Shown here: positions 2 through 63,489 of the stretch, in pieces | Layout: each line of letters starts with the position of its first letter | Position numbering within the stretch: position 1 is the first letter of the stretch | Virus record (IMG/VR): IMGVR_UViG_3300036770_007539 | Coordinates: 124,001 to 188,000 of that record | Strand: one strand, 5' to 3' | DNA: 64,000 nucleotides | Program-made: the position numbers and the translations under genes | The notes under the pieces: model-generated | What the model was told of the DNA's origin: nothing | What the model saw: only the letters and a program-made list of their open reading frames with translations | The model's database searches: none

Positions 2-1222
2 CTTCAAGAATTATCAGAGTTCTTAACAAAGAACCCAAGTAAAGCCCCAGAAGCAAATAAGGCTGATTTTGATACCATTATGTTCGTTGGGAGATCCAAT
101 CAAAAAGGAAGCCTAGATGGAGATTGGGGCAGAAGAACCACCAGCTCAATCACCGCTGCAAACAAAGCAACTAAATTAAGTTTAACTCCTTCTCCTTCAA
201 ATAAAGCTGATGAATCAGTTTTATCGAATGAAGCTACTAAGAACACTCAAGCCATACAAAATTGGCTAGACAATAACGGATGGACAAGAGCAGGGGAGAG
301 ACCAGCAGTGGAGCTTGACAGAATTTCCATGGCTATATTTGATTATACTTCCGAGGCAACTGCCCAACAAGATCCAAATGGAACTCCATTAAAAGATAAA
401 GATCTATCTTCCTTATATGCTTTTTATAAATATTTAGAAAAATTTGTTTCAGAACTAAGTATATTGCCTAAAGATCAATGGTTTTTAATATTTAGCTGGT
501 TTAACGGCAGAGTGGAGGCATTACTTGGATCTGAACAAATTCCAGCAGGTAAAAAACCTATTTTTAATACTTATAAAAATTATATTTCTAATTTAAATTT
601 AAAATTTAATCAATTAATTGATGCTTATAAAATTACTGAAGGTCAAGTTCTTGGAGAAGACTTCTTTAAGCTTGATTCTGGAGCGGGCGGTGGCGGAATA
701 CCTATTGGTCAAAGCGGAGTGCCAGGTCAAGGTGGTCCGGACGGTGGCTGGGGACCTGGTGGTCAAGTCGGTCCCGGAGGCAAAGGATTTCAATATGGTA
801 CCATTGAAGAAGGAGAAGGCGATGTAGATCTCGATGAACCGCCCTTTGGTCCTAATGGAATTAATTTAAACTCTCCTCACTTTGATGGTTTTGAATTAGG
901 ATTCAAGAAAAAATTCCCCATATCCTATTTTAAATATAGAGCCGTTGATGTCGCAAGAACTTTATTTGCAAAAAACCATCGGTACACAGAATCTACAAGA
1001 GAATTGACCCTTAAGTGTGTTGATGATTACTCAATATTTTTAAGTAATTTGCAAGTAGCAGTTTCTGCTGCTCTTGATAGTTATAGAGAAAAAGCCAATC
1101 CTCCTGATGAAGTTTTTGAAATAGTATATAAAAACAGTGTAACAATTGGTAGAATGATCAGCAGTCACTTAAGTCAATTAACTGATGTGGCAAGACAAAT
1201 GGCAGCCGGAAGAACTCTATGA
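2..1222 (+). CDS. Hypothetical virion/internal head protein, 5'-truncated; peptidoglycan-binding-like motif and Gly/Pro-rich linker
   Basis: Frame is open from base 2, upstream of the ATG at 80. DGDWGRRT resembles the PG-binding DGxxGxxT signature. Contains a GVPGQGGPDGGWGPGG stretch and overlaps the next gene at ATGA. Confidence 0.55.
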   Translation, partial: LQELSEFLTKNPSKAPEANKADFDTIMFVGRSNQKGSLDGDWGRRTTSSITAANKATKLSLTPSPSNKADESVLSNEATKNTQAIQNWLDNNGWTRAGERPAVELDRISMAIFDYTSEATAQQDPNGTPLKDKDLSSLYAFYKYLEKFVSELSILPKDQWFLIFSWFNGRVEALLGSEQIPAGKKPIFNTYKNYISNLNLKFNQLIDAYKITEGQVLGEDFFKLDSGAGGGGIPIGQSGVPGQGGPDGGWGPGGQVGPGGKGFQYGTIEEGEGDVDLDEPPFGPNGINLNSPHFDGFELGFKKKFPISYFKYRAVDVARTLFAKNHRYTESTRELTLKCVDDYSIFLSNLQVAVSAALDSYREKANPPDEVFEIVYKNSVTIGRMISSHLSQLTDVARQMAAGRTL

Positions 1223-50060: not shown

Positions 50061-50498
50061 ATGAGTTTTGATTTGAAAATTTTAAATGGGGATCTTGTAG
50101 TAGACTCTACTGGAGATTTAAAAAAAGTAGAAAACAAAGATAAGTTAATACAAGATCTATTGAAAATATGCACTACCCCAAAAGGATCTAAGAGAAAATA
50201 TCCTTTTTATGGATCTTTAATTACTAATTCTTTAATTGGATCTGCTTTCCCCGAAGATTTTATTAACACCTACGCAAGTTCTCAATTAAAAGATTCTTTG
50301 CAATCTCTTATAGATATGCAGGGGCTTCAGCAGAGATTTCAATATATGTCTCCCCAAGAATCCATTGCTGCTTTGCGCGAGGTTTCTATTAATAGATTTA
50401 CTGGAGATCCTAGATATTTTTTAATTTACATTTCAGTTATTAATAAAGCTTTTGATAGGGTGGATGCGCAATTTGAATTAAACACTACTGGATTATAA
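50061..50498 (+). CDS. Baseplate wedge / sheath initiator (gp25-like)
   Basis: DL.I..GDL, LIQDL...TPKGS...P.YGS. Confidence 0.72.
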   Translation: MSFDLKILNGDLVVDSTGDLKKVENKDKLIQDLLKICTTPKGSKRKYPFYGSLITNSLIGSAFPEDFINTYASSQLKDSLQSLIDMQGLQQRFQYMSPQESIAALREVSINRFTGDPRYFLIYISVINKAFDRVDAQFELNTTGL

Positions 50499-50635: not shown

Positions 50636-53600
50636 ATGGCTAGAATTCGTACATCCAGTGAAATTATCAGAAGCTATCTGGATTTTTATAGGACGGCTCA
50701 GCCCTCTTTAGATACTAAACCGGGAACCGTCACAAGAGATATCCTAATTGATGGACCATCTGATCAGATTTCTAGATTATATGATGAATTAAACAGCGTA
50801 TCTAATCTTCAGTCTTTGCGCCAGTCATTTGGAACAGACCTTGACAACTGGGCTCAAAATATAGGCGCTAGCAGGCGTAGAGGTGCAAAAGCTACGGTTC
50901 CTGCTTTGTTATTATTTGATAGCATTGACGCAGACATTCCTATTAGCAAAGGAGATTTAATTTTTGCTAAAAACGGATCTTCTTTTGCCGTATTAAATAA
51001 TATTGTTATTTCTTCTACTAAAGAAAGTCAGTATAAATCCACAGTATCAAAATACAGAGGCGACTTAGACTTTTTAGGATTTACTGAGGAGTATGCTTTA
51101 GAAGTTGTTGTAGAGGCAACATCTCCTGGTGAGCAAGGAAATATATCTAAATATAATTTAAACAATACAAATATTTCTGGAATTACTCATGTAACTAACG
51201 TATTTCCTGCGGGCGGAGGTCGTCCAGCAGAAACCGATTCTATATTTAAAAATAGAATATTGGCAATCTTTAGCGGCTCCAATACTGGAACATCTTTGGG
51301 ATATGAAAGTACAGCAAGAACAGATCCGTCTGTTATTGATGCTATAGTAGTTTCCCCTGGAGATCCACTAATGACTAGGGACGGAACTCAAGTATCGATA
51401 GCGGAAGATGGTACAAGAACAATTATTTCCGATGGTACTGGTGGAAAAGTTGATATTATTACTTATGGAGTTAGATTACAAGAAACCATAGATTCATTTA
51501 TTTACAAAGATAAAAGTAATACAGGGGACCCTACTAATTTTGCTAATGATTTTATTTTAGGGCAGGTTTCTGGAGACGAAAATAAAACGGTAACTAAAAA
51601 AAGAATAGATAATTTGGCATCTGGAATTCTTCCAAATCAGCCTACTTATAATATTGCTTCTGTTACTGGATCGTCTAGCGGACCTAATTTTAAAGCTATA
51701 TCCGTTGATTCTTTCGGTAGAATTTCTGGAAATTATGAATTAATTAAAGATACGGGAGCATATGCTGGATCTCCTTGGGGCTTTGATAGGTTGCGATGGA
51801 TTTCAAATACAATAGAAGATTATCCGGAAGATAAGAGTAAAATTAATTTTAATAGCCAAGACCCTTTGTCTTACACTGATATTTCTAAAATTGGAAGAAT
51901 AACTCAAAATATTGTTATTACTAATGAAAATAGCAAAACATCCCCTACAGACAGGACAATAATTCAACTAGCTCACAAGCCCGTAACAACAGTTACTAGA
52001 GTATTTAACGTTTCTACCGGGGAAAGATATGTAATAGCTAGCCAAAATCCAGATGGCACCGGCACTATTAACACCACTGGAAGAATAAAAATTACTGGAA
52101 AATCTTTACCTTCAACCAGTGACATCTTGCAAGTAGATTATACTTGGGTTTTTGATTATGATCCATATTGGGATTTTGATAATAGATTTTTTTCTTTCAA
52201 TGCTAGAACCGCAACAGATAGCGTTGACTGGGGATATTCTAATTTAGTTAGAAGAGAAAGGGGCGTCTTAGTTTCATCTGGAAGTTATTTATCTTTAGAT
52301 CTAACTCATAATGTTTCTTCTGTAATTAAAGTAGATGTTTTCTCTGAGGAAAATTCTTCCGTTACAATAACATCGGGCAAATTATCTGTAATAACATCTT
52401 CTGTCATATCTAATATAGTTTCAATTAAAAGAGTTTCTGATAATTCTGAACTTTGGGACACGCAGGATAATGACGGAACTATTAGCGGACTAACCGCTTA
52501 TTTGCCAACAGACACAGTTGCCCAATTCAATGATGCAGTAGTTATAATTTATAATGCAACTGATATTTATGGAGATACTGGGTCGTTTAATAACAATCAA
52601 TTAACAATTATCCCTTCAAGCTTAGCTGTTTCAGGGGCAATTGTTGAAGCTACTTATGTTTCTAATATTAACAACTTATTGCCTGCAACTTTGCTATCCT
52701 CTCTCCCAGCTATAAGAAGTGAAAATTATTTCTCAACTAACAGCGCCAATGTGATTGGTAATCAACCAACTTCTCATATATTTTCAGGTTTAAATATTGT
52801 TCAAAATCTTAGACAAGCCCCCTCTAATTTAGTTTTAACCATTACCGGTACAATTGTTCCAGGTACTATTACTTGCTCTGGCACAACAATTTTTAATTCA
52901 GGGGAAATTGTATTTACTGCAAGTAATTCTGGTTTAACTCATGATTTGTCGCCAGCCATTAGAACATCTCTGGGTTTGACATCTAGAGATTCTTTGCCTT
53001 CTAATATTAAAATTGGAAGATTAGTTCAATTTGAAAAAGTTGTAACTGATACCGGTTCTAATGTTTTAGCCATTATTAATTCGTATGATGTTCCAGGTTA
53101 CTCAATCAAAGATAATTTTTTAGTTAAATCTGAATCAGTGCAAAATACTAATTTAAATAATTTTCAAATTACCCTGCCTAGTACAATAGACAATTTAAAT
53201 AATGAAATTAATATTGGAGATAAAATTAGAGTAAGATTCTTTTTAATTTACATGAATGATTCAGAAAATGTATACTTTACTAGGTCAGGCACTCAATATA
53301 CACAAAAAAGGTTTGTTTTTGTTGATGCTATAGCCATTACAAGTGGATTTAATAATTCATCTTCTTCTGCGGCAACTTTAACTGTTAACAATTTAAATCA
53401 GCCACTAAATAAATCTAGATATAAAACTTTTTATAATTATTTAGCTCCTAAAAGCAATGAAAGAATAACTATCACTTCTAACTATAATAAACTAATAAGC
53501 GATGTTACTTTAGCTGTCGAGCAAAACAGACCAATTACTGCAGATGTATTAGTGAAAGAAGCTCAGTTTATATTAGTAGATGTAACAATGTACGTTGTTT

Positions 53601-53866
53601 TAACCGAGGAGTTTAAAAATTCTCCATCTGTAGTAAAGCAAAATGTTCAAGATACTGTTACGGCAGCAGTTAATTCTGATGCTTTGAATCAAATTATTGA
53701 CTCTTCAGATCTCATTAATACTGCATATACAGTGCCAGGAGTGGATAGGGCAAGAATTATATTCTTTAATGAGAGCGGAAAGACAGGCTCAGTGTTAAGT
53801 ATTAAGCCACAAAAAAATCAATATACCGTGGCAAATACTATCTCTATAGTTATAGAAGAACGATAA
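50636..53866 (+). CDS. Baseplate J-like wedge protein (gp6-like)
   Basis: D.KPGTV.RD, DLD..A.N.G..R, A..PG..GN, GG...ETD..F..RI; C-terminal VPGVD. Confidence 0.8.
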   Translation: MARIRTSSEIIRSYLDFYRTAQPSLDTKPGTVTRDILIDGPSDQISRLYDELNSVSNLQSLRQSFGTDLDNWAQNIGASRRRGAKATVPALLLFDSIDADIPISKGDLIFAKNGSSFAVLNNIVISSTKESQYKSTVSKYRGDLDFLGFTEEYALEVVVEATSPGEQGNISKYNLNNTNISGITHVTNVFPAGGGRPAETDSIFKNRILAIFSGSNTGTSLGYESTARTDPSVIDAIVVSPGDPLMTRDGTQVSIAEDGTRTIISDGTGGKVDIITYGVRLQETIDSFIYKDKSNTGDPTNFANDFILGQVSGDENKTVTKKRIDNLASGILPNQPTYNIASVTGSSSGPNFKAISVDSFGRISGNYELIKDTGAYAGSPWGFDRLRWISNTIEDYPEDKSKINFNSQDPLSYTDISKIGRITQNIVITNENSKTSPTDRTIIQLAHKPVTTVTRVFNVSTGERYVIASQNPDGTGTINTTGRIKITGKSLPSTSDILQVDYTWVFDYDPYWDFDNRFFSFNARTATDSVDWGYSNLVRRERGVLVSSGSYLSLDLTHNVSSVIKVDVFSEENSSVTITSGKLSVITSSVISNIVSIKRVSDNSELWDTQDNDGTISGLTAYLPTDTVAQFNDAVVIIYNATDIYGDTGSFNNNQLTIIPSSLAVSGAIVEATYVSNINNLLPATLLSSLPAIRSENYFSTNSANVIGNQPTSHIFSGLNIVQNLRQAPSNLVLTITGTIVPGTITCSGTTIFNSGEIVFTASNSGLTHDLSPAIRTSLGLTSRDSLPSNIKIGRLVQFEKVVTDTGSNVLAIINSYDVPGYSIKDNFLVKSESVQNTNLNNFQITLPSTIDNLNNEINIGDKIRVRFFLIYMNDSENVYFTRSGTQYTQKRFVFVDAIAITSGFNNSSSSAATLTVNNLNQPLNKSRYKTFYNYLAPKSNERITITSNYNKLISDVTLAVEQNRPITADVLVKEAQFILVDVTMYVVLTEEFKNSPSVVKQNVQDTVTAAVNSDALNQIIDSSDLINTAYTVPGVDRARIIFFNESGKTGSVLSIKPQKNQYTVANTISIVIEER

Positions 53867-53867
53867 T

Positions 53868-56800
53868 ATGGCAGTATTAAAAGCTTTAGAAGTTAAAGTT
53901 TTAAGTAGCACAAAGATTCAGGCTAAATTTAATTTAGAGCTTGATCCTTTGATTAATACATCTAATATATCTATCAGATCCAACGTATTTAATATTCCAG
54001 ACCCTGCTGTCTTGGAGGTCAAGGTTAGTAAAGATAAATTAACTATTTTAACTCAGCCTTTATTTCCTTACACTCAATATTTTGTAACTTTCAAGTCTTC
54101 AGATTTATTATTGTTTAAATCTATCAATGGCGTTTCCCTAGTGGAAGATGGAAAATTAAATGTATTTTTAATTTTAGGTGCGGAAGACCCTAGCAATCCT
54201 TTTAGAGATTATTTCTTATATGAATTAAAAGATGATCCATATAATTTAGATTATGGCACAATAGTTAGAGATATAATAAATGTTAACTCAGACTTTTTAG
54301 CTAATGCTCTTTATGATATACGAGAGCTTAAAAATGATAACTATTTAAGCAGAACTATTTTTAATGAATTAAAAACTAGGGGAGCTGGACCCGTAGACCG
54401 CTTATCCGAAGGCGGAGCATATGAGATAATTAAAGTTTCTAAAAATGCCGAAGGAAGATTAATAAATGATTCTATTAATTTTGAAGAGTTTCCTTCTTAT
54501 CCAATAACCTTGCAAAGAAAGGTTGTTTCATCAGAAAAGTTAACTCCCGGAAGTGGCACTTCTACAGTTAACGGTTTGTTGTTAAACTTAAAAAATAAAC
54601 CAATAACTGCAGTCAAATCTATTATTATTCAATATAGTAACTCTGGAAAATACATTTATAATATTTCTTCTTTGGGGTATCAAATACAGGATAATCGATA
54701 TGACCCTGATTACGCTTCTTCTTATCAATTATTAGAAGAAAACCAGGTATTATTATCTTCTTTAGTGCTAGAGGATGATAATTTTTTCACCCCTGTAGCC
54801 GGAGATATTGTTTATGTCTCTTATGAATATAAAGATTTGGGCAGAATTGTCAGCGAGGATTCGATAGAAGTTTATAAAATTTTAGAAATTAATAGAGAGG
54901 TCGTACCTCCAATCTTAAATTCCTTTTCGCTTCCTCATTATCCAATAGTAGATGAAGTTGGAAATATTCCAACATTTAATGGAATAGAATTTTTAGATCC
55001 TCTTTCCAATCCTCCTTTTTCTCAAACTCATCCTGCATTTATTAAAGAAATACCTTACAAGCTGGAAGGTCTTCCCAAAGCTGTTGGGGAGTATTCTGTT
55101 GATTATTCTACTGGATCTATTTATGTTTATGGAGCTGAAAAAAATGATGGAACTGGAGATTTTCCACCGGTAGTATCATACTTATATAAAAATTTATTTG
55201 TTAAAGAGTTAGATTATAATTATGATGAAGACACATATGAAGTTGTAAGATCTCCTTTGAGATTTTTAGAAGGCGATTCCGCTAAAATAAGTTTCTCTTA
55301 TGAGAAGACTTTAATTCCATATATTGATTTTATACCTAAAGTTCATACTGAAGTTTTAAATGAAAGAATTGAAAATAAATTTCTTTCCAATAACTCTTTT
55401 ATTGTCAACAATGCCCCAGTGACAAATGTTTTTAGAATATATAATGAAACTTCTGGGGAGGTTTATTCAGTTGATAGGTTTTCCTTTAATAAGGTATATT
55501 TTTCATCTAGAATATCTCCACAAGTTAATACAATCATTAAAGAACGAGCAGAATTTTCAAAAGTTGAAAATGAACTACTTCTTGTAAATGAAGAGCTAAC
55601 TAACTTATCTTCAGTTAAAATTTTTAAAATTAATTTACAAAATAATAAGATAATATCTTCTACTGAAGATTCTATAGGCTCTTCTTTTAATAGTTCTGTC
55701 TTTTTTAGTAGGACTGATATTTTCTCTACTGAATTGTATTATGATTACGTTAGTTTGACCGAAGGAAGTAATATTAATAAATTGTCTGTTGGTCAATATC
55801 TAATTAATTATCAAGATGGCATAGTATATGTTGGAGTTGATAATAATCAAGTTTATGATGTGGGAACAATTTCATATAAAAAACCATACATAAAGACTCA
55901 ATTTAGTCATATTATTGCTGTTAATAACTTATATAATAGCATTCTGCCAAATAAAATTTATAAAAATATTAAATATAATTCTTTCTCTGATTCTGAAATT
56001 TTACCATCAACTTTTGAAGTTTCAGATGAAAGATTTTTAAATCAAAGCACACTAAATCCATATATTGTATCTTCAAATACAATTACTGTAACTGATGATA
56101 TTAGTTATGTTAGGGGCGTGTACGATTTATATGATTTGAATAATAATATTGATGTTGTTAATTTTTCTGAAAATTATTCTTCTTCATCCAATGTTATAAC
56201 TTTGACTCCAATACAGAGAATAGTTTCTAGCCAGATATCTGCTGGATTAATTGTTTCATTACCATATGTTTCTCCGGGAGTAGAAATATACGAGGTTAAA
56301 TCTATAATTAGAAAATCTGACAATGTAGAATTATATGATACCGGTGCAATAATTTCTGGTTATGATATTATTTTATCAGGGGTTAATTCTCCTGTAACTG
56401 GAGAAGAAGTTACAGTTTATTATAGCATAAGAATGAATGGCTCTGCTACCCCAGTCGTTGATTATGCAAGGGGCGATCTTTTTCTTGATTATGAATATGT
56501 TGCAGATGAAGTCCTTGTAAGTTATGAGCATGGGGATAATTGTTTAGATTTTTCTCAAAGTAATTCTATTGATGAAGGCGAAGAATATTATGTTACTTAC
56601 AAGGTTGGAGCATTAAGAAATGCACTATTTAAAAACTTTGGTTCATTAGTAAATATTCCAATTTTAAATAGTTTCGATACTTCATTAGAAAGAGAAAGAT
56701 ACAGAGATGCATTGAGGGGAGCCTTGCAATCCTTTGCTAAAGGTCCAACTTTACCTTCTATGAAGTCTTTAGTTGAATTTATCACTCATATTCCGCCTGA

Positions 56801-59800
56801 AATTGTTGAAGCCGCTTTCGATAATTGGAACTTAAACATTGGTCATTTATACAATAATCAAATTGAAACAACTGGCAATCTTTTGCTTAGCCCTGGAAAA
56901 TTTGACAATGGTGTTTTAATTGAAAACGCCGATGAAACAATATCATTCCCAGTGTCTAACAATCTAAAATTAGAAGAAGGTACTTTAGAAATGTGGGTTG
57001 TTCCTAAGTGGAACGGCTTAGACAATGATGCTACACTAACCTTTCAAGTTCTAAAAGATGGATATGTATTGCCGAGCGATCATATTTTTATTGGAGCCGC
57101 AGGAAATCATCCAACGTTAGATCTTAATAATAAATTTTCTGTCATTAAAAATGATAATTCAATAGGCTTGCCAACAGCAATCTACACCAATATTGGCGCT
57201 TTTATTTTTTATGATGAAGACCAGTTCCGTTGGAAATTCTTAGTAAGAGATAAGATAAGTGACGGATATTCTTATCATGGAACAATAGAAACTTCTGGAA
57301 GTTTTTATCATGTTAATTTTATTGATGGTCTAGGCGAGTTGACAGATAAATTAAAAACAAAAAATTCTATTATTGAATTTACTTTCAATATAGATTCTCA
57401 GGACGAGTTATATCCAGACGGCTACGTTGATGGCTATGCAGATGGATATGTAGATGGTTATGATGGATATTCTGATGGATATTATCCTTTAGATGGATAC
57501 GTGCCAGGTTATTCCTTTGACGGTATAAGATTCATGTCCGATAACGAACATTATTTATTTGATTTTGGTAATGAGTCTTATAAAAATAGATTCTCTTTAT
57601 TTAAAGATGGCTCTGGTTATTTAACTTTTAGAGTATACGATAATGGATCATTTGATAGAATTAACAAATATACAGTCAGTGCCGACATTTCAAATTGGAG
57701 AGCTGGAGAATCTCACCACGTTGCTATTTCTTGGAAGTTGGCAACAAAAGATAAAAAAGATGAGATGCATTTATTTATTGATGGCATAGAGATTCCAAAC
57801 ATCATTAAGTATGGCGGCAGACCAATTTCTACATTAACAGATCGGTTTAGGACGGTAGTTCCAGAATATGTACTAGGAACTATTACTCAAAAGATAATTA
57901 CATTTAATGATTTAAATACTGATGGAAGTAATCTTGTATATTCCGACAGTATTAATTTTACTTCAGAAGGAATTGTTCCAGGGGACATTTTAGAAATTAA
58001 AGAATTGGGATTGGGTGCTTATACCATATCTTCCGTTTCTGGTAATTACTTGACTTTAACAAGTGCGGTTCCTTCAGTGCTAAGCAATGCACGATTCACA
58101 ATAAATCCATATTCTATTATTGTATCTTCGGAAATTGATCTTTATAAGAACTTTACAGTTTCGCTTTTCAGTGGTTCTTCCGAAGAAGAACTACCCGGAC
58201 TAAGAGCTGATATTCCAGGCTATGAGATTAGTAAAAACTTTTTAAATCAAAATATTTTAACTATTTTGGGAAATGCCAATGTTGGAGATCAGGTTGTTAT
58301 TAGGACATTAGGGTTGAATTTCCGAAGAGCCAGAGAAAGAGTTTATGTTTGGGGCAACAATTTAAATATATTAAGAACACAGCTGCCATCACCAATCAAT
58401 TTAGACGAAGTAAAAATATACCCAGTCATTTTGCCAAAGGTAGCTATTGGACCAAGTAATTCTACCTATTCTTTAGGTTTGTTTAATTTTACTACGTCAG
58501 ATATTTCTCAAACTTCTTCTCCTTTAGAAGGAAGAACTTTGGCAATAAAAGTATTTTCTGGAAATGTTGATTTTTCAACTCCAGTTACGGTAGTTATTAA
58601 TGGCACAACCAACTCTACACCTAATGAAACTTTAACCTTTAGTTCAGCAGGGACACAATACACAACTAAAAAATTTACCAACATTACATCTGTGGATGTA
58701 ATTGCTAAGCCGTTTAATCCGCTAAAAAATTCGGCAATTGTTGAAATTAAAGAAAAGTATACTATTACTTATTCCGAAGGAAATTCTGTTTTTCCAGTTA
58801 TTAGGTATTCTTACAAAACTCAAACTGGAAGTACTTTATCTGGAAATTCTGGCTCTTCTATTGTGGAAGATTTAAATGGATATTTTGTTTTTTCAAATAT
58901 AGATCAGTCCTTAGTTATCTCTTCACCTATAAGTGTGGCTGGCACTTATCAAATTGTCAATAAGCTTTCCGATAAAAGCATAGAAGTTTTCCCTGCCCTT
59001 CCTGCAAGTTTTTCTAATGGAATCTATGATATTTTTAATACATCTATTAGCCGCTCAGGTTTTGCTAATGGATTTTTTACATTAGAGACTGCTGGTCAGG
59101 TAAATGTTCCATTTAATTTAAATAACGGATATTATGATTTTGATTATTCTGTTAATTTAGAAATTCCTTTTGATCCATTAACAAATGATAAAATGTATAT
59201 TGGATCTAGTATTCATGGTGATTGTCAGGCGTCTTCTATTATTGATGAATTGAGAATTTTATCTACAATGTTAACCGATGTCAGAATAGGCGAGACTTTA
59301 ATATCTGGAACTGAAAGTGTAACTATAGACGCTGCTAAGATTAGACCATTTAGAAAAAATAGTGACACATTAACTTTGATTCACTTCGATGATAAACCAT
59401 TTAATAATGATTCAGATTTTTGGATTTCATCTAACAAAGAATATATTCAATCAACATCTAGTGTTAACAGTGATTTCGGAAAGTCTTTATTAATTAAAGA
59501 TAGACCTTTAATTTATGATAATTTAGGATATCTATCAACATCTTCTCAGGGTACAATTGAATTTTGGGTTTCTCCAATGTTTGATACTGGAAACGACCCA
59601 GAGTATAGGTTTTATTTTGATGCCGCCGCATTGACCACGGAAGATTTGATTTCTACTTCTAAGGCAAGCATTATATTGAATAATAGAGCGTCTTCTATTA
59701 GTTCTATTTATGTAGAAGGTGATAAGAAGAACTATGCAGCTCAAGCTGTAATACAATCAGATTTTAAAACAGTAAAATTGAGCATTCCATTGCCATATCA

Positions 59801-60545
59801 AAAAACTCCTGTAAAAGTAACATATACTCAAGTGGGAGTTCTTGGAGATAGAATATCTATTTATAAAGATTCAGAGAGCTATATTAATTTAACTGTTAAA
59901 GCTTCTGGTAAAGAGTATCAAGTTAGACAACCTGTCTTATGGACTAAAAACTCTTGGCATAGAATTAAAGCTACATTTAAATTTAATCAGCCCAATAATA
60001 ATGATGAGATTGGATTGTTTGTGGACGGTGAAGAAAGAGGAACAGTCAGATTTGGAAATGGTTTGCTTTTTGGAACAGGAGCTGTTTATGGTCAGGGATT
60101 TGCCGGTGTAGATAATTCTACGCTAACTGCCGACATTAATTTCTTGGATGTTATTAGTAAATTTTACATAGGCTCTGACATTAATTCCGTTAATTTAGCC
60201 AAAGCCAGAATAGATAATTTTAAAATTTCTAATATTGTTCAGCCGTTCTATATGATCGCGGGTCAATCTAAAGACGTAAACTATAATTCCAATATAGATA
60301 CTGTATTTCCCGTTGTAGAAGATGCTTATACGACATTTTTATTAAATTTTAATGCTTTATTTAGTATAAATACAGAGTGGGCAACTCTAAGAGATAAATA
60401 CTTTGGAATTTATAATTTTACAATTAAAATAATAGATTCTTTTGATATAGTTTCTGAAAGCGAAAAAGTAAAGCAAATATTAGAGACTTTAATCAATATT
60501 CTTAAGCCCGCTCAATCTAAGGTAACATTAGAATACTTAGACTAG
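53868..60545 (+). CDS. Very large baseplate wedge protein with LamG/concanavalin-like domains
   Basis: 2225 aa; YRDAL...KGPT..SM; EGTLEMWV.P.W, HHVAISW..LFIDG, IDELRI, WHRI...LFVDG; ends LKPAQSKV. Confidence 0.7.
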   Translation: MAVLKALEVKVLSSTKIQAKFNLELDPLINTSNISIRSNVFNIPDPAVLEVKVSKDKLTILTQPLFPYTQYFVTFKSSDLLLFKSINGVSLVEDGKLNVFLILGAEDPSNPFRDYFLYELKDDPYNLDYGTIVRDIINVNSDFLANALYDIRELKNDNYLSRTIFNELKTRGAGPVDRLSEGGAYEIIKVSKNAEGRLINDSINFEEFPSYPITLQRKVVSSEKLTPGSGTSTVNGLLLNLKNKPITAVKSIIIQYSNSGKYIYNISSLGYQIQDNRYDPDYASSYQLLEENQVLLSSLVLEDDNFFTPVAGDIVYVSYEYKDLGRIVSEDSIEVYKILEINREVVPPILNSFSLPHYPIVDEVGNIPTFNGIEFLDPLSNPPFSQTHPAFIKEIPYKLEGLPKAVGEYSVDYSTGSIYVYGAEKNDGTGDFPPVVSYLYKNLFVKELDYNYDEDTYEVVRSPLRFLEGDSAKISFSYEKTLIPYIDFIPKVHTEVLNERIENKFLSNNSFIVNNAPVTNVFRIYNETSGEVYSVDRFSFNKVYFSSRISPQVNTIIKERAEFSKVENELLLVNEELTNLSSVKIFKINLQNNKIISSTEDSIGSSFNSSVFFSRTDIFSTELYYDYVSLTEGSNINKLSVGQYLINYQDGIVYVGVDNNQVYDVGTISYKKPYIKTQFSHIIAVNNLYNSILPNKIYKNIKYNSFSDSEILPSTFEVSDERFLNQSTLNPYIVSSNTITVTDDISYVRGVYDLYDLNNNIDVVNFSENYSSSSNVITLTPIQRIVSSQISAGLIVSLPYVSPGVEIYEVKSIIRKSDNVELYDTGAIISGYDIILSGVNSPVTGEEVTVYYSIRMNGSATPVVDYARGDLFLDYEYVADEVLVSYEHGDNCLDFSQSNSIDEGEEYYVTYKVGALRNALFKNFGSLVNIPILNSFDTSLERERYRDALRGALQSFAKGPTLPSMKSLVEFITHIPPEIVEAAFDNWNLNIGHLYNNQIETTGNLLLSPGKFDNGVLIENADETISFPVSNNLKLEEGTLEMWVVPKWNGLDNDATLTFQVLKDGYVLPSDHIFIGAAGNHPTLDLNNKFSVIKNDNSIGLPTAIYTNIGAFIFYDEDQFRWKFLVRDKISDGYSYHGTIETSGSFYHVNFIDGLGELTDKLKTKNSIIEFTFNIDSQDELYPDGYVDGYADGYVDGYDGYSDGYYPLDGYVPGYSFDGIRFMSDNEHYLFDFGNESYKNRFSLFKDGSGYLTFRVYDNGSFDRINKYTVSADISNWRAGESHHVAISWKLATKDKKDEMHLFIDGIEIPNIIKYGGRPISTLTDRFRTVVPEYVLGTITQKIITFNDLNTDGSNLVYSDSINFTSEGIVPGDILEIKELGLGAYTISSVSGNYLTLTSAVPSVLSNARFTINPYSIIVSSEIDLYKNFTVSLFSGSSEEELPGLRADIPGYEISKNFLNQNILTILGNANVGDQVVIRTLGLNFRRARERVYVWGNNLNILRTQLPSPINLDEVKIYPVILPKVAIGPSNSTYSLGLFNFTTSDISQTSSPLEGRTLAIKVFSGNVDFSTPVTVVINGTTNSTPNETLTFSSAGTQYTTKKFTNITSVDVIAKPFNPLKNSAIVEIKEKYTITYSEGNSVFPVIRYSYKTQTGSTLSGNSGSSIVEDLNGYFVFSNIDQSLVISSPISVAGTYQIVNKLSDKSIEVFPALPASFSNGIYDIFNTSISRSGFANGFFTLETAGQVNVPFNLNNGYYDFDYSVNLEIPFDPLTNDKMYIGSSIHGDCQASSIIDELRILSTMLTDVRIGETLISGTESVTIDAAKIRPFRKNSDTLTLIHFDDKPFNNDSDFWISSNKEYIQSTSSVNSDFGKSLLIKDRPLIYDNLGYLSTSSQGTIEFWVSPMFDTGNDPEYRFYFDAAALTTEDLISTSKASIILNNRASSISSIYVEGDKKNYAAQAVIQSDFKTVKLSIPLPYQKTPVKVTYTQVGVLGDRISIYKDSESYINLTVKASGKEYQVRQPVLWTKNSWHRIKATFKFNQPNNNDEIGLFVDGEERGTVRFGNGLLFGTGAVYGQGFAGVDNSTLTADINFLDVISKFYIGSDINSVNLAKARIDNFKISNIVQPFYMIAGQSKDVNYNSNIDTVFPVVEDAYTTFLLNFNALFSINTEWATLRDKYFGIYNFTIKIIDSFDIVSESEKVKQILETLINILKPAQSKVTLEYLD
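57417..57500 (+). repeat. Tandem coding repeat of seven DGY units
   Basis: DGYVDGYADGYVDGYDGYSDGYYPLDGY, encoded with varied synonymous codons. Confidence 0.9.
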
Positions 60546-60567: not shown

Positions 60568-63489
60568 ATGACAAAAAGAATAGAAGTTTCCGGATTGCAA
60601 AATTTATTTAGGGACGCTCAGCGTGTATCTAAAGAAGACTTGGACACAGAGCAAAACTATAATAATAAAATTCAATCATCAATTATAAACAATCATCTTG
60701 GCTCTGGAATATTATTAGAAAATCCAGAACAAGTTATTATTTTTGATTCTGATTCTTTAACTTCTGTTCAAGCAGGTCTGTTAGCCGCTGGTAATTTTGA
60801 TGGAACAGGCTTGTCGCCCCACTCTCAGCCATCGGATATTAATCTTGGAAATCAATTAGAAATATCTTTAACGGATTCTTCCGTTGTTGGCAGATTTTCT
60901 GCTAAGGTAGCTATAATAGGGTTGTCTTTTGATGGAGAATTGCAGATTGATAGATTTTATTTTTATAAAAACGAATCTCAAGTTACTGCAAATCATTATA
61001 AAAGAGTTCTTGCTATTTTAACAAATGATTTTAAAGGTAATAATAATTGTTCAAGAAATTTGGGCGGCAGATTAGTCATTAAAGAAGCAAAGTCTTTTCA
61101 AATATCGAGAGATCCTATTATGATTTCTCAGGACGTAGAGCCTGATATTTTTTGGAGAGATTTTAAAATAGCCAATTCCACTTCTAGCTTACAAGCTACA
61201 TTGCAAGCCGCCATTGGACCTGAATATAATGTTGATTCTTTAAATATAAATACTACTGGCAGACCTAATAGAGAATTGACTATTGGAGACGTATCATCTC
61301 ATGTTGGTCAAAAATTTATTGCAAAAACTGATAATATTCAAAAAATTACTTTATTAATGGGAGCTTCTCGCGATGACTCAGCTCCAGAAGTCAATAGATA
61401 TGATTGGTCTGGCTCTTTAGTTGTAAGTATTTATGCCTTGCAAACTTCTGTTTCTTGCCCAACAGATATAATTCCATCTTTGGCAATTGATTTTGATCCT
61501 CAAGCAGAACCATTGGTTCAATTTGCTTTTAATCAATCAGATCTTAAGGATAATGGATATGTATTAACCGATGTTTTGCAGCCCGTGGATATTGTCTTTT
61601 CATCTTCTAAAATAGGCGCATCTAGATCTTTAAATATAAATAATTATTACGCTTTTACAATTAAAAGAACAGGAGATGCTTCGGTTGGAAACATTCAATT
61701 TGGCTCAGGCAATAATCGCACTGATGACTCTAAGTTAACTTTATATAGTGGCGGATCTTGGGTAGATGTTGTAGAAGAAGATTTATGGTATCAAGTTTGG
61801 ACCGATGCACTTAAAATATCAGATGGTCAAGGGTATGACTCTGGTCAAGGAGTTTTTTATCCTAAAACAATTATAGATTCTTCTACTGGAGCTACAATTG
61901 ATAATAAAAAGCAAAATTTTTCATTTAACGACACAGGATTTAATATTCCAAATATTGGAATTTTACAAGCAGTTACAGAGTCTAGTGTAATTGAACAAGA
62001 TGAAAGAACGGGCAATGATACTTTTTCAAGAAAGCAGTTTATTCCCAGCTTTAGTTTAATTTCTAATACTGAATTAACGGATCTTCAAGTTACAACAGAT
62101 CCTTTGGTGGTTGGAGCTGCTAAAGATGTCAACCCTAAAAAAAATCCAGTTTTGCTTAAAAACCAAAGTGTAATTGGTCTTGCTAAATCAAATATATTTT
62201 GTATTTTGAATCCAGACCCAGATTTAATTACCAATAATTTGGTTGGATCTGTTTTAACTCCTAACCTTTTGTCTAGTAGTAAATTTAAAATTGTTAAAGT
62301 TGATTTATGTACAGATGGGTATGGCGATGTAAATGGCGACGGTCAGATCGATTTGTCAGATGTTACTCTTGCGTCTTCTTTAATTGGCGAAAGTATATAT
62401 TATCCTGTTACTCAGCAAAAAATTGTTGATGGATACATTAATACATTTGATCTGTTAAGGGCGGACGTGGATGGTGACGGATATATCACTACTAATGATA
62501 TTGATTTACTAACTCAATACGTAAATAAATCAATTAATTCATTTCCTGCAGGCACATCATTTAATCATCTATGCCTTGAGCTTCAGCCATTAGTTGGGAG
62601 ATACGATGGATACTTTGACTGCGGAGATGGATATGTAAGGGTAGATGGCTCCTCTTCTAATATAATTTCATCTAGTTTACTTAGTGAGTATGAGCTTTTA
62701 TATGATGGATATTACATTCCATCTAATCTGGAATTAGATCCTGTATTTTCTACCGTTCCATTTGCAGGAGTTAATTATCAAATTGCTCCTAAGCCATTTT
62801 GGCAAGATTGGCAAATAAACTTATCTTCTGATGCAAGACTAGTTCCGGCAGCGTTTACATATCTTGAAAGTTCGGAAACTTTTTCTTGTACTGAGACTGT
62901 TGATACGGTGTGCGATTCTCAATATCAAGAAGCTCCAACAATAGACACTGGAAGAAATGACTTTTTTATTCCAAATAATTTATTAATTGGTAATGGTCAA
63001 ATTTTGAATGTTGATGGGTCGCATTTTAAACAAGACTTTGAAATTGCAACTATTGAGCTTAGACTTCCAGAAATTCCTTTAAATGAATCAAAAATTAATA
63101 TTTTTGAAAAATTTGTAGTGGACGTAGGCAGTGGTAAAACAGCTTCTGGATATCCGGCTATGAAATATTCTGATTGCTCAACAGTTCAAATAGAAGATTT
63201 GTTTTTAAATAAAGTTAAATTCAATGTTGCAGTTCAAGCCTTCTATAAAAACTTGGATGGATATGACGCAGATTTAGATGGGTATGTTGTCATTGAAGAT
63301 CCTACGATTGGCGTCCTAATAGATCATTCTACTGGCATTCTTACTTTAAATGCCAGCGATCTTGCCGAAGATACGGTCTTCAAATCATTAGTAACAAAGA
63401 TTTCAGTAACAGTATACTTAAAGAAGGCAGGGTGGAATAATAGACATCTTATTGTGACTTCGAATGAGATACAGGGATTACTCTCATAA
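60568..63489 (+). CDS. Virion/baseplate-associated protein with a dockerin-like paired Ca-binding motif
   Basis: 973 aa; YGDVNGDGQIDLSDV and RADVDGDGYITTNDI; eight DGY motifs in the C-terminal half. Confidence 0.65.
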   Translation: MTKRIEVSGLQNLFRDAQRVSKEDLDTEQNYNNKIQSSIINNHLGSGILLENPEQVIIFDSDSLTSVQAGLLAAGNFDGTGLSPHSQPSDINLGNQLEISLTDSSVVGRFSAKVAIIGLSFDGELQIDRFYFYKNESQVTANHYKRVLAILTNDFKGNNNCSRNLGGRLVIKEAKSFQISRDPIMISQDVEPDIFWRDFKIANSTSSLQATLQAAIGPEYNVDSLNINTTGRPNRELTIGDVSSHVGQKFIAKTDNIQKITLLMGASRDDSAPEVNRYDWSGSLVVSIYALQTSVSCPTDIIPSLAIDFDPQAEPLVQFAFNQSDLKDNGYVLTDVLQPVDIVFSSSKIGASRSLNINNYYAFTIKRTGDASVGNIQFGSGNNRTDDSKLTLYSGGSWVDVVEEDLWYQVWTDALKISDGQGYDSGQGVFYPKTIIDSSTGATIDNKKQNFSFNDTGFNIPNIGILQAVTESSVIEQDERTGNDTFSRKQFIPSFSLISNTELTDLQVTTDPLVVGAAKDVNPKKNPVLLKNQSVIGLAKSNIFCILNPDPDLITNNLVGSVLTPNLLSSSKFKIVKVDLCTDGYGDVNGDGQIDLSDVTLASSLIGESIYYPVTQQKIVDGYINTFDLLRADVDGDGYITTNDIDLLTQYVNKSINSFPAGTSFNHLCLELQPLVGRYDGYFDCGDGYVRVDGSSSNIISSSLLSEYELLYDGYYIPSNLELDPVFSTVPFAGVNYQIAPKPFWQDWQINLSSDARLVPAAFTYLESSETFSCTETVDTVCDSQYQEAPTIDTGRNDFFIPNNLLIGNGQILNVDGSHFKQDFEIATIELRLPEIPLNESKINIFEKFVVDVGSGKTASGYPAMKYSDCSTVQIEDLFLNKVKFNVAVQAFYKNLDGYDADLDGYVVIEDPTIGVLIDHSTGILTLNASDLAEDTVFKSLVTKISVTVYLKKAGWNNRHLIVTSNEIQGLLS

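What the first reader, a model, noticed from the sequence alone, without database searches (positions are those of the whole stretch)
57417..57500. Seven-copy DGY array inserted inside a LamG-like domain of the giant baseplate protein
Seen: PDGYVDGYADGYVDGYDGYSDGYYPLDGYVPGY lies between LamG motifs (EGTLEMWV upstream; YLFD...RFSLF...HHVAISW downstream). Codons differ between units (gac ggc tac, gat ggc tat, gat gga tat, gat ggt tat) and spacers vary, so this is not a fresh DNA slippage. Inference: a multivalent display loop for whatever recognises DGY, and the strongest single argument that the motif is functional.
Basis: partly seen in the sequence, partly recalled or inferred. Interest (0 to 1): 0.75.

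Follow-up and report, generated by a model that had tools for sequence, protein, structure and literature searches.

The report
Conserved, copy-variable DGY loop repeat
A giant baseplate protein of an uncultured jumbo phage carries, in a loop of a lectin-like (LamG) domain, a run of Asp-Gly-Tyr units whose three residues are kept almost perfectly while the number of units changes constantly between relatives; it is probably a flexible contact loop, but what it binds is unknown.

Summary
ORF 53868-60545 (2225 aa) has seven DGY units at aa 1184-1211 (window 57417-57500), plus a terminal PGY. The whole protein would be expected to hold 0.54 DGY.

- **Fold:** a predicted structure places the array inside a discontinuous LamG/ConA-like jelly roll (best solved-structure match Z 18.5). 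It forms a coil loop with pLDDT below 50 between high-confidence strands.
- **Conservation:** the array sits at the same site in 118 homologues from metagenomic jumbo phages, with 1-7 copies. These hold 394 DGY units, with almost no decayed units (no DGF, one NGY, one EGY).
- **Codons:** synonymous codons between units are as mixed as codon usage predicts, so the residues are under selection and the units are not recent DNA copies.
- **Copy number:** it changes at least 45 times on the 118-sequence tree. This is the most length-variable stretch of the 886-aa region.
- **Distant relatives:** 3100-3700-aa proteins have D-[G/A/S]-Y arrays at the same site. A ~2300-aa clade has only 0-1 unit.
- **Exposure:** two relatives carry a ~490-aa insertion inside the array, so the site is probably exposed.

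The function was not determined. The best guess is a multivalent Tyr/Asp contact loop for a host-surface ligand or a metal. A "reader of DGY" remains untested.

The parts
57417..57500 (+). Seven DGY units (aa 1184-1211), with spacers of 0-3 residues
   Evidence: pLDDT is below 50 for aa 1186-1210, with no secondary structure.
57501..57569 (+). Conserved exit of the array: V-P-G-Y, then the strand motif S-F-D-G-I-x-F-M-x-D-x-x-H-Y-L-F-D-F-G. D1218, G1219, D1225, H1228 and D1232 are invariant in 118 homologues.
   Evidence: invariant columns D244 G245 D251 H254 D258 of alignment A1. Strands E241-251 and E254-260, pLDDT about 90. This motif also anchors the most distant relatives.
57003..57416 (+). 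Beta-rich subdomain inserted after the 'EMWVVP' strand of the LamG core. The DGY array is its return connection to the core.
   Evidence: strands E83-201, high pLDDT. Comparison with the C-terminal LamG, where WVSP...YRFYFD is contiguous.
56901..59408 (+). Discontinuous LamG/ConA-like jelly roll (aa ~1012-1847). It has two large insertions, at aa ~1046-1214 and ~1312-1780.
   Evidence: 155-200 residues of model range 38..873 align to PAPP-A LamG-like (Z 18.5), pentraxins (Z 14-16), laminin LG5 (Z 13.7) and neurexin LNS (Z ~12).
57807..57857 (+). Second low-confidence but highly conserved loop (aa 1314-1330, G-G-R-P...D-R-F-R). It may be an interface.
59850..60137 (+). C-terminal LamG domain (Pfam Laminin_G_3, aa 1995-2090). 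It has no array at the equivalent loop.
   Evidence: (E 9.8e-11)
53868..60545 (+). Whole gene: 2225-aa putative peripheral baseplate (wedge) protein
   Evidence: 508 homologues of ~2200-2240 aa.
50636..53866 (+). Upstream neighbour: Baseplate_J / gp6-like wedge protein
50061..50498 (+). gp25-like sheath initiator / baseplate wedge protein
60568..63489 (+). Downstream neighbour: 973-aa protein with a dockerin type I domain (aa 585-653) and 8 scattered DGY

Best explanation
The array is a short tandem peptide repeat, D-G-Y plus 0-3 spacer residues. It forms a flexible, probably solvent-exposed loop where an inserted beta-subdomain rejoins the core of a LamG/ConA-like lectin fold, in a peripheral baseplate protein of a jumbo myovirus.

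Shown:
- Each unit is kept by purifying selection on all three residues: Asp not Asn/Glu, Gly, and Tyr not Phe.
- The number of units is gained and lost very often by in-frame indels.
- The first and last units, and the following S-F-D-G...D..H-Y..D strand, are fixed.

Inferred: the loop works as a multivalent contact element. Tyr hydroxyls and Asp carboxylates on a glycine-hinged chain give many weak, identical contacts to a repeating external ligand. The most likely ligand is a host cell-surface polysaccharide, possibly with a bound cation, at the ligand-binding rim of the lectin fold. Changes in copy number would tune reach and avidity.
For: - **Position and fold:** AF2 model of aa 975-1860 has mean pLDDT 85.5 and pTM 0.78. 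The array lies between strands with pLDDT about 90, but is itself below 50 and coil. The two-copy homologue P0073 also gives coil, with mean pLDDT 57. The LamG/pentraxin/CBM jelly roll matches at Z 12-18.5.
- **Selection:** 118 distinct arrays hold 394 DGY. DG followed by a non-Y residue occurs 7 times (never F, W or H); D-x-Y with x not G occurs 4 times; NGY once and EGY once.
- **Codons:** identical 9-nt unit pairs within arrays are 12.5% (adjacent units 11%), against 13.5% expected from codon usage, over 31 arrays and 104 units.
- **Lability:** copy numbers run from 1 to 7. There are at least 45 changes on the 118-sequence tree, against 64.9 +/- 2.6 for shuffled labels. 40% of pairs that are at least 70% identical outside the array differ in copy number. 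The length s.d. is 6.0 aa, against a median of 0.62 for other 41-aa windows.
- **Exposure:** P0055 and P0121 carry a ~490-aa insertion inside the array, with DGY units kept on both sides.
- **Recurrence:** D-[G/A/S]-Y arrays occur at the same loop in distant 3100-3700-aa relatives. Four relatives have a second DGYDGYDGY array in another loop.
- **Context:** the gene follows the gp25-like and gp6-like baseplate genes and precedes a dockerin-bearing protein. This order is conserved in a relative that is 55% identical.
- **From general knowledge, not tested here:** the top fold matches include carbohydrate-binding modules and tailspike lectin-like domains.
Against: - No ligand, glycan or host is known, and no binding was tested.
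- Binding loops under host pressure usually diversify in sequence. Here the sequence is frozen and only the length varies.
- Sugar-binding aromatic platforms usually tolerate Trp or Phe, which never appear here.
- A ~2300-aa clade of relatives manages with 0-1 unit at this loop, so the array is not essential to the fold or to the family.
- Low pLDDT may partly reflect the gappy alignment of the repeat.
- I could not read model coordinates, so neither exposure nor the rim on which the loop lies was measured.
Confidence: 0.4

Rival explanations
1. Metal-binding loop. Asp carboxylates, with Tyr hydroxyls or backbone carbonyls, chelate hard cations (Ca2+, possibly Fe3+). The loop is disordered only in the metal-free prediction and becomes rigid in the virion, so each extra unit adds a site.
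For: - Asp is never replaced by Asn or Glu, and Gly is kept.
- With period 4, Asp falls at positions 1, 5 and 9 and Gly at position 6 of an EF-hand-type loop (my own mapping, a lead only).
- The next gene has a true dockerin with two D-x-N/D-x-D-G calcium loops, one of which contains DGY.
- Invariant D, D, H and D residues directly follow the array.
- LamG domains often carry a rim calcium site (general knowledge).
Against: - The canonical DxDxDG pattern is absent.
- Spacing between units varies from 0 to 5 residues, which does not fit a fixed coordination geometry.
- Strict Tyr (no Phe) is not needed if only the backbone carbonyl binds.
- The only available test, complex prediction with Ca, was not folded and gives no evidence.
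Confidence: 0.2
2. Assembly interface. The array is a disorder-to-order segment that docks onto a neighbouring baseplate or fibre subunit in the assembled virion, and copy number co-varies with the partner.
For: - Strong conservation together with low pLDDT is typical of segments that fold on binding.
- A second conserved low-confidence loop (aa 1314-1330) lies in the same domain.
- Baseplate proteins are densely interlocked (general knowledge).
Against: - An interface would not normally tolerate 1-7 copies, at least 45 copy-number changes, or a 490-aa domain insertion in its middle.
- No partner was identified.
Confidence: 0.17
3. Acceptor array for a post-translational modification of tyrosine, such as O-glycosylation. 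The flexible loop presents several identical D-G-Y sites to an enzyme.
For: - Tyr is strictly required and Phe never occurs. All three residues are fixed in a disordered loop at variable spacing, as in other acceptor repeats.
- A ~17-kb glycan-synthesis cluster begins 22 bp after the next gene. It holds GT4, several GT2, GT6, GT11, pyruvyl transferases, methyltransferases and GDP-sugar dehydratases/epimerases. A relative has the same arrangement.
- DGY is about 4-fold enriched genome-wide.
Against: - No enzyme is linked to the motif.
- Such glycosyltransferase clusters in phages more often modify DNA or host surface glycans (PMC12619734 discusses the options).
- No sulfotransferase (PF13469, PF00685) is present in the 301-kb record.
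- Several scattered DGYs sit in ordinary structural contexts.
- DGY pairs outside this gene are only weakly clustered (4 against 1.3 expected, P 0.03).
Confidence: 0.1
4. Neutral, slippage-prone linker. The units look conserved only because they are recent copies of one another.
For: - Copy number is highly labile.
- The DNA has a weak 12-nt periodicity and one perfect 23-nt stretch.
Against: - Codons of units within an array are no more alike than codon usage predicts.
- There are essentially no decayed units among 394.
- The motif persists in relatives of 30-40% identity and in other loops.
Confidence: 0.04

Closest known systems
LamG / LNS / pentraxin / ConA-like lectin domains with insertions in rim loops (e.g. 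neurexin LNS splice inserts, PAPP-A LamG-like module, CBM-type domains of tailspikes)
   Same: The jelly-roll fold matches at Z 12-18.5. A variable insertion sits in an inter-strand connection, and a conserved acidic motif lies beside it.
   Different: The domain here is split by two very large insertions. The variable element is a tandem tripeptide repeat, not an alternative exon or an ordinary variable loop. No calcium or ligand site has been shown. Pfam does not recognise this first domain on its own.
Tyr/Asp/Gly/Ser-rich antibody CDR-H3 loops and minimal Tyr-Ser-Asp-Ala synthetic paratopes (recalled from the literature; the 'four-amino-acid code' is cited in PMC4353359 and PMC3310866)
   Same: The composition is similar: G 20%, Y 19%, D 17%, S 8%. 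Both are flexible loops on a beta-sandwich in which tyrosine dominates.
   Different: CDR loops vary in sequence. Here the sequence is frozen and only the length varies. There is no evidence of binding. This is an analogy only.
EF-hand / dockerin / DxDxDG calcium loops
   Same: An Asp-Gly-aromatic/aliphatic triplet is shared, and a genuine dockerin with such loops is encoded by the next gene.
   Different: The array lacks the D-x-D-x-D-G pattern and the 12-residue register, and its spacing is irregular.
Length-variable tandem repeats in phage and bacterial surface proteins (contingency-type repeats; collagen-like G-X-Y runs of tail fibres)
   Same: In-frame copy-number change is frequent between close relatives.
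   Different: The DNA units are not identical (72% matches, scrambled codons), so this is not a classical hypermutable microsatellite. Periods of 3 and 4 are mixed, and Gly becomes Ala or Ser in distant relatives, so it is not a collagen triple helix.
T4 gp7-type peripheral baseplate wedge proteins
   Same: The gene lies directly after the gp25-like and gp6-like genes.
   Different: There is no detectable sequence match to gp7 or any PHROG. The protein is twice as long. No relative exists among 50,697 deposited phage genomes.

Membership tests
LamG / ConA-like lectin superfamily (first domain, holding the array) | Two-sheet jelly-roll fold superposable on solved LamG/pentraxin domains | tested here: met
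   Z 18.5 (PAPP-A), 16.2 (PTX3), 13.7 (laminin a2 LG5), with 155-200 aligned residues. This is on a predicted model, not a solved structure.
LamG / ConA-like lectin superfamily (first domain, holding the array) | Significant match to a Pfam LamG profile | tested here: not met
   aa 1000-1400 alone gives no Pfam hit. Its core does match the C-terminal domain, which is Laminin_G_3-positive, in nearly every homologue (E 1e-5 to 1e-13).
LamG / ConA-like lectin superfamily (first domain, holding the array) | Rim calcium or ligand site | not testable with these tools
   Invariant D1218, D1225, H1228 and D1232 lie next to the array, but no coordinates are available and the ion job was not folded.
EF-hand / DxDxDG calcium-binding loop | D-x-[DN]-x-[DN]-G pattern with a 12-residue loop register | tested here: not met
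   Direct reading of aa 1183-1215. Asp lies at i, i+4, i+8, and spacers vary from 0 to 5.
Collagen-like G-X-Y repeat | Uninterrupted Gly every third residue over many triplets | tested here: not met
   Periods 3 and 4 are mixed. Relatives have DAYDAYDAY.
Hypermutable DNA tandem repeat (contingency locus) | Near-identical DNA units | tested here: not met
   (72% matches). (unit identity equals the codon-usage expectation). The consensus contigs of three samples are identical over the array; contigs cannot show rare variants.
Myovirus baseplate wedge module | Gene order sheath - tube/sheath initiators - gp25-like - gp6-like (Baseplate_J) - large peripheral protein | tested here: met
   The same order occurs in a relative. 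Membership of the 2225-aa protein itself rests on position only.
Tyrosine-modification acceptor repeat | Demonstrated modification, or a dedicated enzyme linked to the motif | not testable with these tools
   A neighbouring glycosyltransferase cluster is present. No sulfotransferase is present. No proteomic data are available.

The most novel reading that the evidence does not exclude
The DGY units are acceptor sites for a covalent tyrosine modification, for example O-glycosylation by the ~17-kb glycan-synthesis cluster that starts right after the baseplate genes. On this reading the jumbo phage decorates its own baseplate with a glycan brush whose density is set by repeat copy number. A variant of this reading is that the Tyr/Asp units chelate Fe3+ or Ca2+ as a virion-borne metal site.
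Probability: 0.1. Interest if true: 0.85.

Novelty: new variant of a known kind. Interest (0 to 1): 0.5.

Why it matters
The pattern is unusually clean. A three-residue unit is frozen at the protein level, scrambled at the codon level, and counted up and down dozens of times within one phage lineage. It lies in a loop that structure prediction calls disordered, on the part of the virion that meets the host.

Such a pattern means the unit itself does something specific, and the number of units is a tunable parameter. If the ligand is a host polysaccharide or a metal, this would be a simple, portable adhesion module. It would also serve as a marker of host-range tuning in a large, uncultured group of jumbo phages found in groundwater, lakes and sediments, with contigs up to 480 kb. 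If the tyrosines are modified, it would be a new type of virion decoration.

The result also shows that the family has no cultured or deposited relative, so any experiment would open the group.

Tried and rejected
- **Foldseek against the PDB with the 886-aa model:** only poor global matches (TM about 0.1). Replaced by the domain-tolerant VIA search.
- **PDB sequence searches with the family profile and with the 33-aa array:** nothing meaningful.
- **PHROGs on the protein:** no family.
- **Megablast and tblastn against 50,697 deposited phage genomes:** no match.
- **Complex prediction with four Ca2+:** the job was counted but not folded. It is no evidence either way.
- **Literature:** no description of a DGY repeat. 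'DGYDGY' occurs in one unrelated paper.
- **Sulfotransferase families in the phage record:** none, so tyrosine sulfation by a phage enzyme is unsupported.
- **Sequencing runs:** only assembled contigs are available. Three groundwater samples carry the identical seven-copy array, and within-population length polymorphism cannot be judged.
- **ESM Atlas features of the array segment:** only weak LamG-type leads.
- **Clustering of DGY pairs elsewhere in the genome:** weak (4 against 1.3, P 0.03). I do not rely on it.
- **Collagen-like, EF-hand and microsatellite readings:** each rejected on a tested defining feature (see the membership table).
Full report
**1. Observation**

The window is bases 124,001-188,000 of a 301,007-bp IMG/VR virus record, estimated about 71% complete. 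It is 34% G+C. ORF 53868..60545 (+) encodes 2225 aa.

Asp-Gly-Tyr occurs at aa 1184, 1188, 1192, 1196, 1199, 1203 and 1209. That is seven units in 28 residues, exactly window 57417-57500, followed by V-P-G-Y. From the protein's composition, 0.54 DGY would be expected in the whole protein; nine are present.

Tandem Repeats Finder finds only a degenerate 12-nt period (72% matches). It also finds one perfect 23-nt stretch made of the preferred codons.

**2. Where the array sits**

Gene order:
- tail sheath (31954-34386) and tube and sheath initiators;
- a gp25-like protein (50061-50498);
- a Baseplate_J/gp6-like protein (50636-53866);
- this gene;
- a 973-aa protein with a dockerin domain.

A relative that is 55% identical has the same order. 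Calling this a baseplate protein therefore rests on position only.

An AlphaFold2 model of aa 975-1860, built on 118 homologues, has mean pLDDT 85.5 and pTM 0.78. A fold search that tolerates multi-domain queries aligns 155-200 residues, spread over model residues 38-873, with solved jelly rolls:

| Solved structure | Z |
|---|---|
| PAPP-A LamG-like module | 18.5 |
| AbnA carbohydrate-binding domain | 16.9 |
| CBA120 tailspike domain | 16.7 |
| Pentraxins | 14-16 |
| Laminin LG5 | 13.7 |
| Neurexin LNS | ~12 |

The clostridial neurotoxin HCN and NTNH hits in that list share only this common lectin-like fold.

The LamG domain is therefore real but discontinuous. It has one insertion at aa ~1046-1214 and another at aa ~1312-1780. 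Its closing strand is the I-I-D-E-L-R-I-L-S motif at aa 1791.

The array is the last part of the first insertion. It leads from an inserted beta-subdomain back into the core strand S-F-D-G-I-R-F-M-S-D...H-Y-L-F-D-F-G. In the C-terminal LamG (Pfam Laminin_G_3, E 9.8e-11), the equivalent strands are contiguous.

Pfam does not recognise the first domain alone. However, a profile of its core matches the C-terminal domain in nearly all homologues.

**3. Structure of the array**

- In the window's model, aa 1186-1210 have pLDDT below 50 and no secondary structure. The flanking strands are at about 90.
- In a homologue with only two units (P0073), the loop is still coil. Its mean pLDDT for the ten-residue block is 57, and no stretch falls below 50.
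- The array is thus a loop in both models. The extra units lengthen a bulge between two fixed anchors.

**4. Comparison with relatives**

A word-indexed search found 508 homologues. Almost all are 2200-2240 aa and come from metagenomes, on contigs up to 459 kb. IMG/VR holds relatives on contigs up to 481 kb. No deposited phage genome has a relative.

| Measure | Result |
|---|---|
| Array at same position | 120 best homologues |
| Copy number (copies: sequences) | 1:2, 2:32, 3:15, 4:43, 5:20, 6:7, 7:1 |
| Window's array | the longest |
| DGY units in 118 distinct arrays | 394 |
| DG followed by non-Tyr | 7 (never Phe, Trp or His) |
| D-x-Y with x not Gly | 4 |
| NGY / EGY | 1 / 1 |

The other x-G-Y triplets (P, A, S) belong almost entirely to the fixed terminal x-G-[YF]-S-F-D-G position. 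The first unit (P-D-G-Y) and the last (D-G-Y-x-x-G-Y) are more than 90% conserved. Spacers are variable in length (0-5 residues) and in residue.

**5. Selection or recent duplication?**

I compared codons in 31 distinct DNA arrays (104 units).
- Codon use of D, G and Y in the arrays resembles the rest of the gene.
- The fraction of identical 9-nt unit pairs within an array is 12.5% (adjacent units 11%).
- Independent draws from codon usage would give 13.5%.

Synonymous sites are therefore randomised while the amino acids are kept. This means purifying selection on each unit, not recent slippage or homogenisation.

**6. Copy-number dynamics**

- On a tree built without the array columns, copy number needs at least 45 changes among 118 sequences. 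Shuffled labels need 64.9 +/- 2.6, with a minimum of 55.
- 40% of pairs that are at least 70% identical outside the array differ in copy number.
- The array is by far the most length-variable stretch of the 886-aa region: s.d. 6.0 aa, against a median of 0.62.
- Two relatives (P0055 and P0121, ~2717 aa) carry a ~490-aa insertion in the middle of the array, with DGY units on both sides. It probably holds an extra LamG domain, since those proteins alone carry PF02210. This argues for an exposed, permissive site.

**7. Distant relatives**

An exhaustive profile search gave 447 representatives.
- Proteins of 3100-3700 aa have arrays at the same loop, such as six DGY in P0182 and P0193, and DGY-DAY-DAY-DAY-DGY in P0174.
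- Four proteins have a second DGYDGYDGY run in another loop of the inserted subdomain.
- A ~2300-aa clade (31-41% identity) has a short G-G-S-type loop there, with no DGY or a single one.

The repeat is therefore recurrent and widespread. It is not indispensable for the fold.

**8. What it does**

Nothing computed here identifies a ligand. Three facts must be explained together:
- strict need for the Asp carboxylate, the Gly, and the Tyr hydroxyl;
- irregular spacing;
- free variation in number, in an exposed loop of a lectin fold on the host-facing part of the virion.

My best reading (confidence 0.4) is a multivalent contact loop for a repeating external ligand. The most likely ligand is host surface polysaccharide, perhaps with a cation. 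Copy number would tune reach and avidity.

Rivals:
- **Metal-binding loop (0.2).** The carboxylates, the dockerin next door and the invariant D/D/H/D cluster after the array speak for it. The absent DxDxDG pattern and the irregular spacing speak against it.
- **Disorder-to-order assembly interface (0.17).** Conservation with low pLDDT speaks for it. The copy-number freedom and the 490-aa insertion speak against it.
- **Tyrosine-modification acceptor array (0.1).** A 17-kb glycan-synthesis cluster begins 22 bp after the next gene and is conserved in a relative, but nothing links it to the motif. No sulfotransferase is present.
- **Neutral slippage linker (0.04).** Largely refuted by sections 4 and 5.

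**9. The wider DGY claim**

DGY is 4-fold over-represented in the genome's ORFs (55 against 13.7). DGT is also enriched, 2.5-fold. 17 of the 55 DGY lie in this gene and the next.

Some scattered DGYs are in ordinary contexts. One sits in a dockerin calcium loop, D-V-D-G-D-G-Y-I-T-T-N-D. Close DGY pairs outside this gene are only marginally more frequent than chance. The array is good evidence that the array is functional. It is weak evidence for a proteome-wide signal.

**10. Novelty**

No Pfam, PHROG, PDB or literature record describes this repeat. The kind of feature is known: a length-variable insertion in a rim loop of a lectin-like domain of a phage tail protein. The form is not known: a frozen tripeptide unit with scrambled codons and very high copy-number turnover. 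I rate it a new variant of a known kind, with interest 0.5.

**11. Limits**

- All structural statements rest on predicted models whose coordinates I could not inspect.
- The ion co-folding job was not run by the tool.
- Sequencing data were available only as contigs.
- The host is unknown. The source is a subsurface metagenome.

Noticed in passing
G000 187,511-204,668, just beyond the window end (L002:112-17269): A ~17-kb glycan-synthesis cluster starts 22 bp after the dockerin gene. It holds GT4, GT2, GT2, a GT2+GT6 fusion (896 aa), GT11 (fucosyltransferase family), two polysaccharide pyruvyl transferases, two methyltransferases and three GDP-mannose-dehydratase/epimerase-type enzymes. A similar glycosyltransferase run follows the baseplate genes in a relative that is 55% identical.
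   Followed up: partly
L002:17292-18599 (G000 204,691-206,001): A TubZ/PhuZ-like tubulin gene (Pfam Tubulin E 2.4e-17 and TubZ-like_C), as in some other jumbo phages.
   Followed up: no
window 60568-63489, aa 585-653: The protein after the giant gene has a dockerin type I domain (E 3.3e-8) with two canonical calcium loops. No cohesin partner was looked for. One of the many beta-sandwich insertions of the giant protein could be the partner.
   Followed up: partly
window 57807-57857 (aa 1314-1330): A second loop of the same LamG region, G-G-R-P...D-R-F-R, is nearly invariant in 118 homologues yet has pLDDT below 50 in both models. It is a candidate inter-subunit contact.
   Followed up: no
P0055 and P0121 (relatives, ~2717 aa): A ~490-aa insertion lies in the middle of the DGY array, probably carrying an extra LamG domain (PF02210 is recorded only for these proteins). 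This would be a domain nested in a loop of a domain.
   Followed up: partly
P0144, P0145, P0165, P0176; loci L050, L051: These relatives have a second DGYDGYDGY run in a different loop of the inserted subdomain, and DAY-DAY units at the main site.
   Followed up: partly
whole genome G000: The tripeptides PQG, GPQ and QGP are 3.5-5.3-fold enriched. This points to a collagen-like G-P-Q repeat protein somewhere in the genome.
   Followed up: no
relative contig carrying P0019: A GIY-YIG homing-endonuclease gene sits between the 2225-aa gene and the dockerin gene. It is absent from the window.
   Followed up: no
window 57430-57463, run X3: A separate 1105-bp contig from the same groundwater sample matches 34 nt of the array with 4 differences. 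It is probably another phage's DGY array in the same community.
   Followed up: no
window 31954-34386 (sheath, aa 175-184); 60568-63489 (aa 680-689, 897-906): DGY pairs spaced exactly 7 residues apart (DGY-x4-DGY) occur in three places in two other virion proteins. Statistically this is only marginal.
   Followed up: partly
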